A stretch of DNA of 63,977 nucleotides, counting the filler, from Octopus bimaculoides (taxonomy: Eukaryota): assembly GCF_001194135.2 (NCBI RefSeq). It is 5 parts of 4 records of this genome, joined end to end, with 100 filler letters (N's around TTAATTAATTAA, not from the genome) between each part and the next. Parts side by side here need not be neighbours in the genome. Positions count along the whole stretch, not along the records: positions 31,686 to 45,377 come from NC_068981.1; 4 more parts are not named here. One strand, given 5' to 3'. A program made the translations under genes and the position numbers. Shown one piece after another: positions 35,464-35,867 of this stretch (position 1 is the stretch's first letter; each line of letters opens with the position of its first letter). Below the pieces are notes generated by a model that had not been told where the DNA came from, made no database searches, and saw only the letters and a list, made by a program, of their open reading frames with translations.

Positions 35464-35510
35464 ATTCTCTGATGAGAACCCAATAAGGTTCGAAAATCGA
35501 TTAAGGTTGT
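35464..35510 (+). ncRNA. Minimal type I hammerhead ribozyme motif, copy 1
   Basis: TTCT-CTGATGA-GAACC(CAATAA)GGTTC-GAAA-ATCGAT-TA^AGGT. Intact core, 5-bp stem II, palindromic stem III (AATCGATT), predicted cleavage after 35503. Confidence 0.8.
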
Positions 35511-35867
35511 TCATCACTTTTTTCAGTCTGCGTAGAAACGGCTAAATTTGCCCTGTTTATAATTATCCCCTATGTTACATATTTATTACACCATACCTTG
35601 ATACTGTGTGGACTAAGATCCTCGTTGACAAGCCGCTGGTATTTATAGAGTGTTAAACACTTTCGGTATACAAATTAGGGACCCCTTCATAGAGCAAAGG
35701 CTACATTTGTTGAGTAAATAAACAGTTTGGTTGATTATTTCTTTGGAGATTCTCAGTGTGTAGGCACCTCTGATGAGAAGCCCATAACGTTCGAAAATCG
35801 ATTAAGGTTGTTCATCACTTTTTCCAGTCTGCGTAGAAATGGCTAAAATTTACCCTGTTTATAATTA
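35467..35867 (+). mobile_element. Retrozyme-like / Penelope pseudo-LTR element: 301-nt unit with about 100-bp terminal direct repeat
   Basis: 35467-35565 and 35768-35867 are direct repeats differing at about 7 positions, each starting with a hammerhead. The 5' end abuts a (TA)n tract and a gap. No ORF. Confidence 0.7.
35765..35811 (+). ncRNA. Minimal type I hammerhead ribozyme motif, copy 2
   Basis: ACCT-CTGATGA-GAA(GCCCATAACG)TTC-GAAA-ATCGAT-TA^AGGT. Intact core, 4-bp stem I (ACCT/AGGT), 3-bp stem II, predicted cleavage after 35804. Confidence 0.75.

What the first reader, a model, noticed from the sequence alone, without database searches (positions are those of the whole stretch)
35464..35867. 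Tandem pair of minimal hammerhead ribozymes defining a 301-nt retrozyme-like unit
Seen: two intact cores (CTGATGA...GAAA) at 35469 and 35770, each followed by the self-complementary octamer AATCGATT and a UUA cleavage triplet. The downstream AGGT pairs with the bases 5' of the core. Predicted cuts after 35503 and 35804 release a 301-nt non-coding monomer. The element has a roughly 100-bp terminal redundancy and starts against a (TA)n tract. Known: Penelope-like elements and animal non-LTR retrozymes carry minimal type I hammerheads with palindromic stem III that cleave as dimers, and retrozyme units of a few hundred nt can yield circular RNAs. Inference: this is a non-autonomous, ribozyme-processed retroelement that may make a small circRNA in this (probably cephalopod) genome.
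Basis: partly seen in the sequence, partly recalled or inferred. Interest (0 to 1): 0.85.

Follow-up and report, generated by a model that had tools for sequence, protein, structure and literature searches.

The report
Decayed hammerhead-ribozyme retroelement copy
This is a worn, roughly 1.3-unit copy of a small non-coding mobile element that carries a hammerhead self-cleaving RNA motif, a kind already known in animals and linked to Penelope-like retrotransposons, so it is an ordinary find rather than a new system.

Summary
The sequence features are real. Two hammerhead motifs with every invariant core base lie at 35469-35503 and 35770-35804 (+), exactly 301 nt apart. Each has the palindrome AATCGATT as helix III and an A at the cleavage position. 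They sit in two ~100-bp direct repeats (about 94% identical) that flank 201 bp of unique, non-coding DNA. The left end abuts a (TG)n(TA)n microsatellite that contains a 21-N assembly gap.

In copy 1 the 5' strand of helix I is replaced by the microsatellite flank. Copy 2 has three substitutions that reduce helix II from 5 bp to 3 bp (-4.4 to 0.0 kcal/mol).

Rfam hammerhead models give no hit. TRF calls no 301-nt period. The 301-nt monomer is no more structured than shuffled sequence. The 13.7-kb piece holds no RT or GIY-YIG ORF and no second copy. No related sequence could be found in any collection available here.

Best reading: a decayed, 5'-truncated, more-than-unit insertion of a short non-autonomous Penelope-type element (an animal non-LTR retrozyme), probably inactive at this locus. 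It is a new member of a known kind, and interest is low.

The parts
35398..35466 (.). (TG)n(TA)n microsatellite forming the 5' flank and likely target site. It contains a 21-N assembly gap at 35438-35458.
   Evidence: Sequence; TRF finds (TA)10.5 at 35417-35437; N run located.
35467..35566 (+). Upstream partial unit (pLTR-like repeat R1). It corresponds to the last ~37 nt before the cleavage site and the first ~63 nt after it. It is 5'-truncated inside helix I of the ribozyme.
   Evidence: Repeat family D14; gapped alignment to 35768-35868; blastn.
35465..35507 (+). Hammerhead motif 1. Core CUGAUGA 35469-35475. Helix II 35476-35491 (5 bp, loop CAAUAA). GAAA 35492-35495. Helix III palindrome 35495-35502. 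A17 at 35503. Helix I 3' strand AGGU 35504-35507. The native helix I 5' strand is missing.
35504..35804 (+). The 301-nt unit between the two predicted cleavage sites. It is non-coding, 38% GC, and has no excess predicted structure (circular MFE -52.6 kcal/mol, z = +1.25).
35567..35767 (+). Single-copy 201-bp body of the unit, between the two repeats. It resembles nothing else in the piece.
35766..35808 (+). Hammerhead motif 2. Helix I is ACCU (35766-35769) paired with AGGU (35805-35808), 4 bp. Core 35770-35776. Helix II region 35777-35792 is reduced to 3 bp by three substitutions. GAAA 35793-35796. Palindrome 35796-35803. A17 at 35804.
35768..35868 (+). Downstream repeat R2, the 3' end of the insertion. 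The boundary is ambiguous between 35868 and 35875, because TTACACCATA recurs at 35589-35598.

Best explanation
The region 35467-~35868 is one old insertion of about 1.33 units of a short (about 301-302 nt), non-coding, hammerhead-bearing retroelement. The type is known as an animal non-LTR retrozyme, now regarded as a non-autonomous derivative of Penelope-like elements (PLEs).

Inferred life cycle of the family:
1. Multimeric transcripts of master copies fold so that two neighbouring minimal type I hammerheads pair through their palindromic AAUCGAUU helix III, forming a double hammerhead.
2. They cut after the UUA triplet and release 301-nt monomers with 5'-OH and 2',3'-cyclic phosphate ends.
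3. A host RtcB-type ligase can circularise these monomers.
4. A PLE reverse transcriptase and GIY-YIG endonuclease supplied in trans copies a circular or uncleaved multimeric RNA past the cleavage site.
5. The copy is inserted into a (TA)n microsatellite with 5' truncation. This yields the typical PLE layout of a partial upstream copy (pseudo-LTR) followed by a full unit.

Shown here: the motif, the spacing, the repeats, the boundaries and the absence of coding capacity. Inferred: every step of transcription, cleavage, ligation and mobilisation.

At this locus the element is most likely dead. Ribozyme 1 lost its helix I 5' strand to truncation, and ribozyme 2 lost helix II to point mutations.
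For: - All invariant hammerhead positions are present in both copies: C3-A9, G12-A14, A15.1-U16.1 and H17 = A. The G10.1-C11.1 pair is present too.
- The palindromic 8-nt helix III is as described for metazoan and PLE hammerheads that act as dimers (PMC4209133; PMC6765202).
- The cofold MFE of two repaired motifs gives intermolecular helix III, trans helix I and both helices II, i.e. a double hammerhead.
- The layout is repeat-body-repeat with a 301-nt period.
- There is no ORF or Pfam domain.
- Unit size and GC (37%) lie within the published retrozyme range of 150-450 bp and below 45-50% GC.
- The insertion reads straight through the cleavage site, so the template was longer than one cleaved monomer.
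- The 5' boundary lies in (TA)n, a preferred target of several PLE clades (PMC8557442).
- Penelope families are present and recently active in octopus genomes, if the source is an octopus (PMC13282606).
- The six substitutions between the repeats include three in helix II and loop 2, consistent with neutral decay after insertion.
Against: - There is no match to any Rfam hammerhead model, even at E <= 10 on 461 nt.
- A motif of this relaxed kind is expected about 500 times per Gb by chance, or about 9 per Gb with the full palindrome.
- No second copy exists in the piece, and no relative was found in the metagenome, viral or prokaryote collections or among predicted proteins. Family membership and covariation are therefore untested.
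- Only 1.33 units are present, and TRF calls no repeat.
- The PLE min-HHR hallmark of an extra nucleotide between A9 and 10.1 is absent.
- No RT or GIY-YIG remnant lies nearby.
- The monomer shows no excess structure (z = +1.25).
- Thermodynamic folding of the native transcript prefers non-hammerhead pairings.
Confidence: 0.7

Rival explanations
1. The locus is a remnant of one particular autonomous Penelope-like element, not an independently amplifying retrozyme family. It would be two pseudo-LTR fragments left after an internal deletion that removed the RT/EN ORF, or an extremely 5'-truncated partial tandem.
For: PLE hammerheads lie in pseudo-LTRs near the 3' end. Most PLE insertions are 5'-truncated and form partial tandems. 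The layout here, a 100-bp partial copy plus a 302-bp unit ending at the same 3' terminus, is exactly PLE-like. In Xenopus, retrozyme consensus sequences match PLE termini.
Against: The two ribozymes are 301 nt apart with no trace of coding sequence between them. A clean 301-nt period is more simply explained by a 301-nt template. The distinction is partly semantic, since retrozymes are proposed to be PLE derivatives.
Confidence: 0.15
2. The locus is a live retrozyme. Both ribozymes cleave, as a dimer, and release a 301-nt RNA that is circularised.
For: Both catalytic cores and both palindromic helix III segments are intact. PLE-type hammerheads tolerate short helices and bulged helix II variants. 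By the RNAfold criterion of Li et al., HHR1 passes at -7.9 kcal/mol and HHR2 is borderline at -4.9 against a cut-off of -5.
Against: In both the single and the double hammerhead arrangement, each active site carries one defective helix. The predicted probability of the cis helix III pairing in the native 422-nt transcript is 0.000. Even intact PLE min-HHRs cleave poorly in vitro. There is no evidence of a promoter or transcript.
Confidence: 0.08
3. The hammerhead-like motif arose by chance inside an unrelated local duplication or nascent minisatellite next to a microsatellite. No ribozyme and no retroelement is involved.
For: The chance rate of the relaxed descriptor is about 500 per Gb. Rfam does not recognise the motif. 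No homologues were recovered. An assembly gap beside the element shows the region is difficult to assemble.
Against: The chance of such a motif falling inside one given 100-bp duplicated segment is about 1e-6 to 5e-5, by scaling the rates. The motif also has the G10.1-C11.1 pair, a 5-bp helix II and a perfect 8-nt palindrome, which were not all required by the descriptor. The unit length and layout match a known, abundant class of element.
Confidence: 0.07

Closest known systems
Metazoan non-LTR retrozymes (Cervera and de la Pena 2020, PMC7229834; Li, Clavereau and Pollet 2026 preprint, 10.64898/2026.07.22.740005)
   Same: Both are non-coding units of a few hundred nt (here 301) with low GC. 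Both are arranged head to tail with a type I hammerhead once per unit. Both have a short helix III with a palindromic loop, implying dimeric cleavage, as in amphibian retrozymes. Both lack LTR, PBS and PPT.
   Different: Only 1.33 units are present, against dimers up to large multimers. TRF does not call the repeat. One ribozyme is truncated and the other mutated. Expression, circularity and copy number are unknown. None of the papers I could search describes a cephalopod example.
Minimal hammerheads in the pseudo-LTRs of Penelope-like elements (Cervera and de la Pena 2014, PMC4209133; Lunse, Weinberg and Breaker, cited in PMC6765202)
   Same: Both are type I with a short helix I (4 bp), a conserved G10.1-C11.1 pair and palindromic 15.2-16.2/loop 3. 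Both sit about 100 nt from the 3' end of the unit in a partial-tandem layout. The insertion next to (TA)n resembles Neptune and Naiad targets (PMC8557442).
   Different: No RT/GIY-YIG ORF lies between or near the repeats. There is no extra unpaired nucleotide between A9 and 10.1. Helix II is 5 bp rather than 6-8 bp. The 2-bp helix III with a 4-nt loop is closer to the 'canonical' metazoan type I layout than to the loop-less min-HHR.
Newt satellite 2 and Schistosoma Sm-alpha hammerhead repeats
   Same: Both are tandem units of about 330 nt carrying a type I hammerhead with a weak helix III that works as a double hammerhead. From my own memory, untested: the 6-nt A-rich loop 2 (CAAUAA) resembles the Schistosoma loop CAAAUA.
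   Different: Those are high-copy arrays or SINE-like elements with demonstrated cleavage and transcripts. Here there is a single decayed 1.33-mer with no sequence similarity shown.

Membership tests
Hammerhead ribozyme (type I) | Invariant core C3 U4 G5 A6 N7 G8 A9 / G12 A13 A14 / A15.1-U16.1 pair / H17 not G | tested here: met
   Both copies read CUGAUGA ... GAAA-AUCGAU-U-A.
Hammerhead ribozyme (type I) | Helix II closed by G10.1-C11.1 and stable (4 bp or more) | tested here: inconclusive
   Copy 1 has 5 bp at -4.4 kcal/mol. Copy 2 has only 3 bp, and the hairpin is not predicted to form (0.0). G10.1-C11.1 is present in both.
Hammerhead ribozyme (type I) | Helix I formed by the sequence 5' of C3 and 3' of H17 | tested here: inconclusive
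   Copy 2 has ACCU/AGGU, 4 bp. In copy 1 the 5' strand is replaced by flank, giving 2 Watson-Crick pairs plus 1 G-U.
Hammerhead ribozyme (type I) | Match to the curated Rfam hammerhead covariance models | tested here: not met
   No hammerhead family is listed at E <= 10, either on the 13.7-kb piece or on 35440-35900 alone.
Hammerhead ribozyme (type I) | Compensatory changes in the helices across homologues | not testable with these tools
   No homologue was found in the piece or in any collection. The two local copies differ by disruptive changes, not compensatory ones.
Hammerhead ribozyme (type I) | Mg2+-dependent self-cleavage | not testable with these tools
   This needs an in vitro transcription assay.
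PLE-associated minimal hammerhead (Cervera and de la Pena 2014) | Very short helix III with palindromic 15.2-16.2/loop 3, allowing a dimeric active form | tested here: met
   AAUCGAUU is a perfect 8-nt palindrome in both copies. The cofold of the repaired dimer gives an 8-bp intermolecular helix III.
PLE-associated minimal hammerhead (Cervera and de la Pena 2014) | Unpaired nucleotide between A9 and 10.1, and a long helix II (6-8 bp) | tested here: not met
   G10.1 follows A9 directly, and helix II is 5 bp.
PLE-associated minimal hammerhead (Cervera and de la Pena 2014) | Located in pseudo-LTRs that flank an RT + GIY-YIG ORF | tested here: not met
   No ORF with RT or GIY-YIG was found. The ten least repetitive stop-free segments of the piece give no significant Pfam hit. 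The scan covered selected segments, not all six frames.
Metazoan non-LTR retrozyme | Tandem repeat of 150-450 bp units, with at least two consecutive units carrying complete hammerheads (operationally: called by TRF, HHR MFE below -5 kcal/mol) | tested here: inconclusive
   Two motifs lie 301 nt apart, but there are only 1.33 units and TRF calls no 301 period. MFE is -7.9 for HHR1 and -4.9 for HHR2.
Metazoan non-LTR retrozyme | Non-coding, low GC (below 45-50%), no LTR/PBS/PPT | tested here: met
   No ORF longer than 45 aa. GC is 37.3%, the same as the surrounding 37.6%.
Metazoan non-LTR retrozyme | Many genomic copies, expressed as linear and circular monomer RNAs | not testable with these tools
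   No source genome or transcriptome is available. There are zero further copies in 13.7 kb.

The most novel reading that the evidence does not exclude
The 301-nt unit could represent a retrozyme family in cephalopods that has not yet been described. Intact arrays elsewhere in the genome would be transcribed and processed by dimeric hammerheads into abundant small circRNAs. This locus would then record reverse transcription of a circular or multimeric template by a PLE enzyme into a (TA)n microsatellite.
Probability: 0.25. Interest if true: 0.4.

Novelty: new member of a known kind. Interest (0 to 1): 0.2.

Why it matters
If the family is confirmed across the genome, it would extend ribozyme-processed small circRNA retroelements to cephalopods. 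It would also give one more case linking hammerhead repeats to Penelope-like machinery and microsatellite targeting. In itself, this locus is a routine repeat annotation: a dead copy of a known class. It changes no open question.

Tried and rejected
- **Rfam cmscan**, on the whole piece and on 461 nt at E <= 10. It returned no hammerhead family, only microsatellite-driven miRNA noise.
- **Metagenome scan** for CTGATGA-N11-19-GAAAATCGATTA. It gave 95 hits, about the number expected by chance. The only recurrent group (L004, L005, L009, L050) is intergenic DNA; the one long contig, L050, is bacterial (it encodes dTDP-sugar pathway enzymes). None resembles the unit.
- **Genome contigs and viral-contig scans**. 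Zero hits. These collections hold no animal genomes.
- **Exact look-ups of three spurious ORFs from the piece**, to identify the source assembly. Nothing is on record.
- **Protein-space searches**, with the ORF spanning ribozyme 2 and with a chimeric query made of all stop-free six-frame segments of the element. No hit.
- **Pfam scan of ten stop-free segments**, looking for RT or GIY-YIG. Nothing.
- **Monomer and cis-dimer MFE folding of the native sequences**. Hammerhead folds were not recovered. Only the repaired consensus dimer folds as a double hammerhead.
- **Test for a viroid-like stable monomer**. z = +1.25, so rejected.
- **Search for a hammerhead on the minus strand, or an inverted partial copy nearby**. 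None.
- **Paper supplements and sequence-string searches**, for octopus PLE or SINE sequences. Nothing is held. Lunse et al. is not held.
- **Recovering an octopus PLE with its pseudo-LTR for direct comparison**. I could not do this because I had no trustworthy PLE RT query sequence.

Full report
**What is in the sequence**

Reading 35200-36200 and a pattern search confirm two hammerhead-type motifs on the + strand.

- Motif 1 has CTGATGA at 35469-35475 and a helix II region at 35476-35491. GAAA is at 35492-35495, AATCGATT at 35495-35502 and A17 at 35503.
- Motif 2 is the same set of features shifted by exactly 301 nt (35770-35804).
- Every invariant core position is present in both: C3-A9, G12-A14, A15.1/U16.1, and H17 = A. 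The G10.1-C11.1 pair is present too.
- AATCGATT is a perfect palindrome. As a monomer, helix III is therefore 2 bp with a 4-nt loop. Between two copies it can form an 8-bp helix.
- A structural descriptor I wrote finds exactly these two sites in the 13.7-kb piece and none on the minus strand. It requires the core, helix II of at least 3 bp, helix III of at least 2 bp, and helix I of at least 3 bp.

**Architecture**

- The repeat finder reports 35467-35549 against 35768-35850 at 93% identity.
- A gapped alignment extends the repeat to about 35566 / 35868. That is about 100 bp with 6 substitutions and 1 indel.
- A single-copy stretch of 201 bp lies between the repeats.
- The layout is therefore a partial unit (100 bp) followed by a full unit (about 302 bp), both ending at the same 3' terminus. 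This is the usual partial-tandem, pseudo-LTR layout of Penelope-like elements, scaled down to a 301-nt unit.
- The insertion reads straight through the predicted cleavage site. Its template was therefore longer than one cleaved monomer: either an uncleaved multimer or a circle.
- The left boundary lies in a (TG)n(TA)n tract. A 21-N assembly gap at 35438-35458 interrupts this tract, and TA repeats continue on both sides of the gap.
- The right boundary is ambiguous between 35868 and 35875.
- No target-site duplication can be called in this low-complexity context.

- Repeat homology in copy 1 begins at the CT immediately before CTGATGA. The native helix I 5' strand (ACCT in copy 2) is therefore absent and replaced by TTCT from the flank. 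That gives 2 Watson-Crick pairs plus one G-U.
- Three of the six substitutions between the repeats fall in helix II and loop 2 of copy 2 (GAACCCAATAAGGTTC becomes GAAGCCCATAACGTTC). This reduces helix II from 5 bp (-4.4 kcal/mol) to 3 bp, and the hairpin is predicted not to form.
- Each active site carries one damaged helix in both arrangements. In the single hammerhead arrangement, each motif uses its own helices. In the double hammerhead arrangement, the core of one copy acts on the cleavage site of the other.
- MFE folding of the native 54-56-nt motifs, of their homodimers, and of the whole 422-nt transcript does not recover hammerhead folds. The cis helix III pairing has probability 0.000.
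- A repaired consensus (helix I from copy 2, helix II from copy 1) does cofold as a textbook double hammerhead, with intermolecular helix III and trans helix I.
- By the operational energy criterion of Li et al. (MFE below -5 kcal/mol), HHR1 passes at -7.9 and HHR2 narrowly fails at -4.9.

**Is it more than chance?**

- The expectation in the piece is 0.0077.
- In 219 Mb of Markov sequence, the relaxed descriptor occurs about 500 times per Gb. With a fully palindromic helix III of at least 8 nt it occurs about 9 times per Gb. That second figure rests on only 2 events, so it is rough.
- The two copies result from one duplication and are not independent.
- The motif alone would therefore not be decisive in a multi-Gb genome.
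- The argument rests on several features occurring together. The motif sits inside the duplicated part of a ~300-nt non-coding head-to-tail unit. It is about 100 nt from the unit's 3' end and next to (TA)n. It also has features the descriptor did not require: G10.1-C11.1, a 5-bp helix II and an 8-nt palindrome.

**Negative results that limit the claim**

- Rfam lists no hammerhead family, even at E <= 10 on 461 nt. The PLE min-HHRs were found in the literature with RNAmotif descriptors. That such motifs may escape the Rfam models is my inference.
- TRF calls no 301-nt period.
- The 301-nt monomer is no more stable than dinucleotide shuffles (circular MFE -52.6 kcal/mol, z = +1.25).
- The piece holds no other copy, direct or inverted.
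- No ORF or Pfam domain suggests RT or GIY-YIG.
- Outside the window nothing related could be retrieved. This covers the metagenome, prokaryote-genome and viral scans, the exact ORF look-ups, and two protein-space searches. The collections contain essentially no animal genomic DNA, so this says nothing about copy number in the source genome.

**Comparison with what is known**

- Cervera and de la Pena 2014 (PMC4209133) describe minimal type I hammerheads in PLE pseudo-LTRs. These have a short helix I, a conserved G10.1-C11.1 pair, and a palindromic helix III/loop 3. They act as dimers and cleave weakly in vitro. Copies are widespread and mostly solitary, left by truncated PLEs.
- Cervera and de la Pena 2020 (PMC7229834) define animal non-LTR retrozymes. 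These are tandem units of 150-450 bp with low GC and a type I hammerhead per unit. [quoted passage not shown] The paper includes a mollusc example, a mussel.
- Li, Clavereau and Pollet 2026 (preprint) show that retrozymes co-occur with PLEs and resemble PLE pseudo-LTRs. They propose that retrozymes are non-autonomous PLE derivatives.
- Craig et al. 2021 (PMC8557442) report the (TA)n insertion bias of several PLE clades.
- The present element fits this class in size, composition, layout and helix III design.
- It fails three PLE-specific criteria. There is no bulged nucleotide after A9, helix II is not 6-8 bp, and there is no flanking RT/EN ORF.
- It only half meets the operational definition of an active retrozyme.
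From my own memory only, the SINE-like repeats in the piece resemble octopus SINEs. If the source is an octopus, Penelope families are present and recently active there (PMC13282606).

**Verdict**

The most likely explanation (about 0.7) is a decayed, 5'-truncated, more-than-unit copy of a short hammerhead-bearing non-autonomous PLE-type element. It is probably inert at this locus. The rivals are:

- an internally deleted remnant of a specific PLE (0.15);
- a still-active retrozyme locus (0.08);
- a chance motif in an unrelated duplication (0.07).

It is a new member of a known kind, and interest is low.

Noticed in passing
window 35954-36278: A 325-bp near-perfect palindrome lies about 85 bp downstream of the element. 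The outer arms are 35954-36055 / 36177-36278 (102 nt, 80% complementary). The inner arms are 36058-36101 / 36134-36177 (44 nt, 89%). It ends against a (TA)n run. It looks like a MITE or foldback element and has no similarity to the hammerhead unit.
   Followed up: partly
window 32485-32655 and 36840-37008: Two copies (80-85% identical) of a SINE-like repeat of about 170 bp, each starting next to a (CA/TA)n tract (families D13/D16). ARAGORN finds no intact tRNA in the piece. From memory they resemble abundant octopus SINEs; this was not verified.
   Followed up: partly
window 39686-39740, 41159-41285, 42227-42381, 44242-44337: Four copies of a second interspersed repeat containing ...GATGAAAGGCAAAGTCGACCTCGGCGGAATTTGAACTCAGAAC... 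(families D10/D12/D15, 64-80% identical). It is probably another SINE family. The piece is thus a repeat-rich, apparently gene-free stretch.
   Followed up: no
window 39371-39562: An inverted repeat with 47-nt arms (83% complementary, 98-nt spacer). It produced a sub-threshold Rfam MIR5649 hit (39.7 bits against a gathering score of 100). It is most likely another small foldback or MITE, not a miRNA gene.
   Followed up: no
window 42014-42110 and 35438-35458: Two assembly gaps (97 N and 21 N) lie in the piece, and microsatellites are very dense ((TA)n, (TG)n, (TAA)n, (GATA)n). These microsatellites produce all the top Rfam hits (mir-297, mir-3149 and others), which are well below their gathering scores and are artefacts.
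   Followed up: yes
L004, L005, L009, L050 (metagenome contigs): A recurrent intergenic sequence, CTGATGA-TAAACAGATTTCTGTTTG-GAAAATCGATTAAAGG, mimics a hammerhead core with a 7-bp helix II. However, it lacks helix I, and L050, the one long contig, encodes dTDP-sugar pathway genes and so is bacterial. It is probably a terminator-like hairpin, and it illustrates how easily the loose pattern matches by chance.
   Followed up: partly
window 38180-38227: This is a third match to the loose CTGATGA...GAAA...TH pattern. It has no helices I to III and is a chance match.
   Followed up: yes
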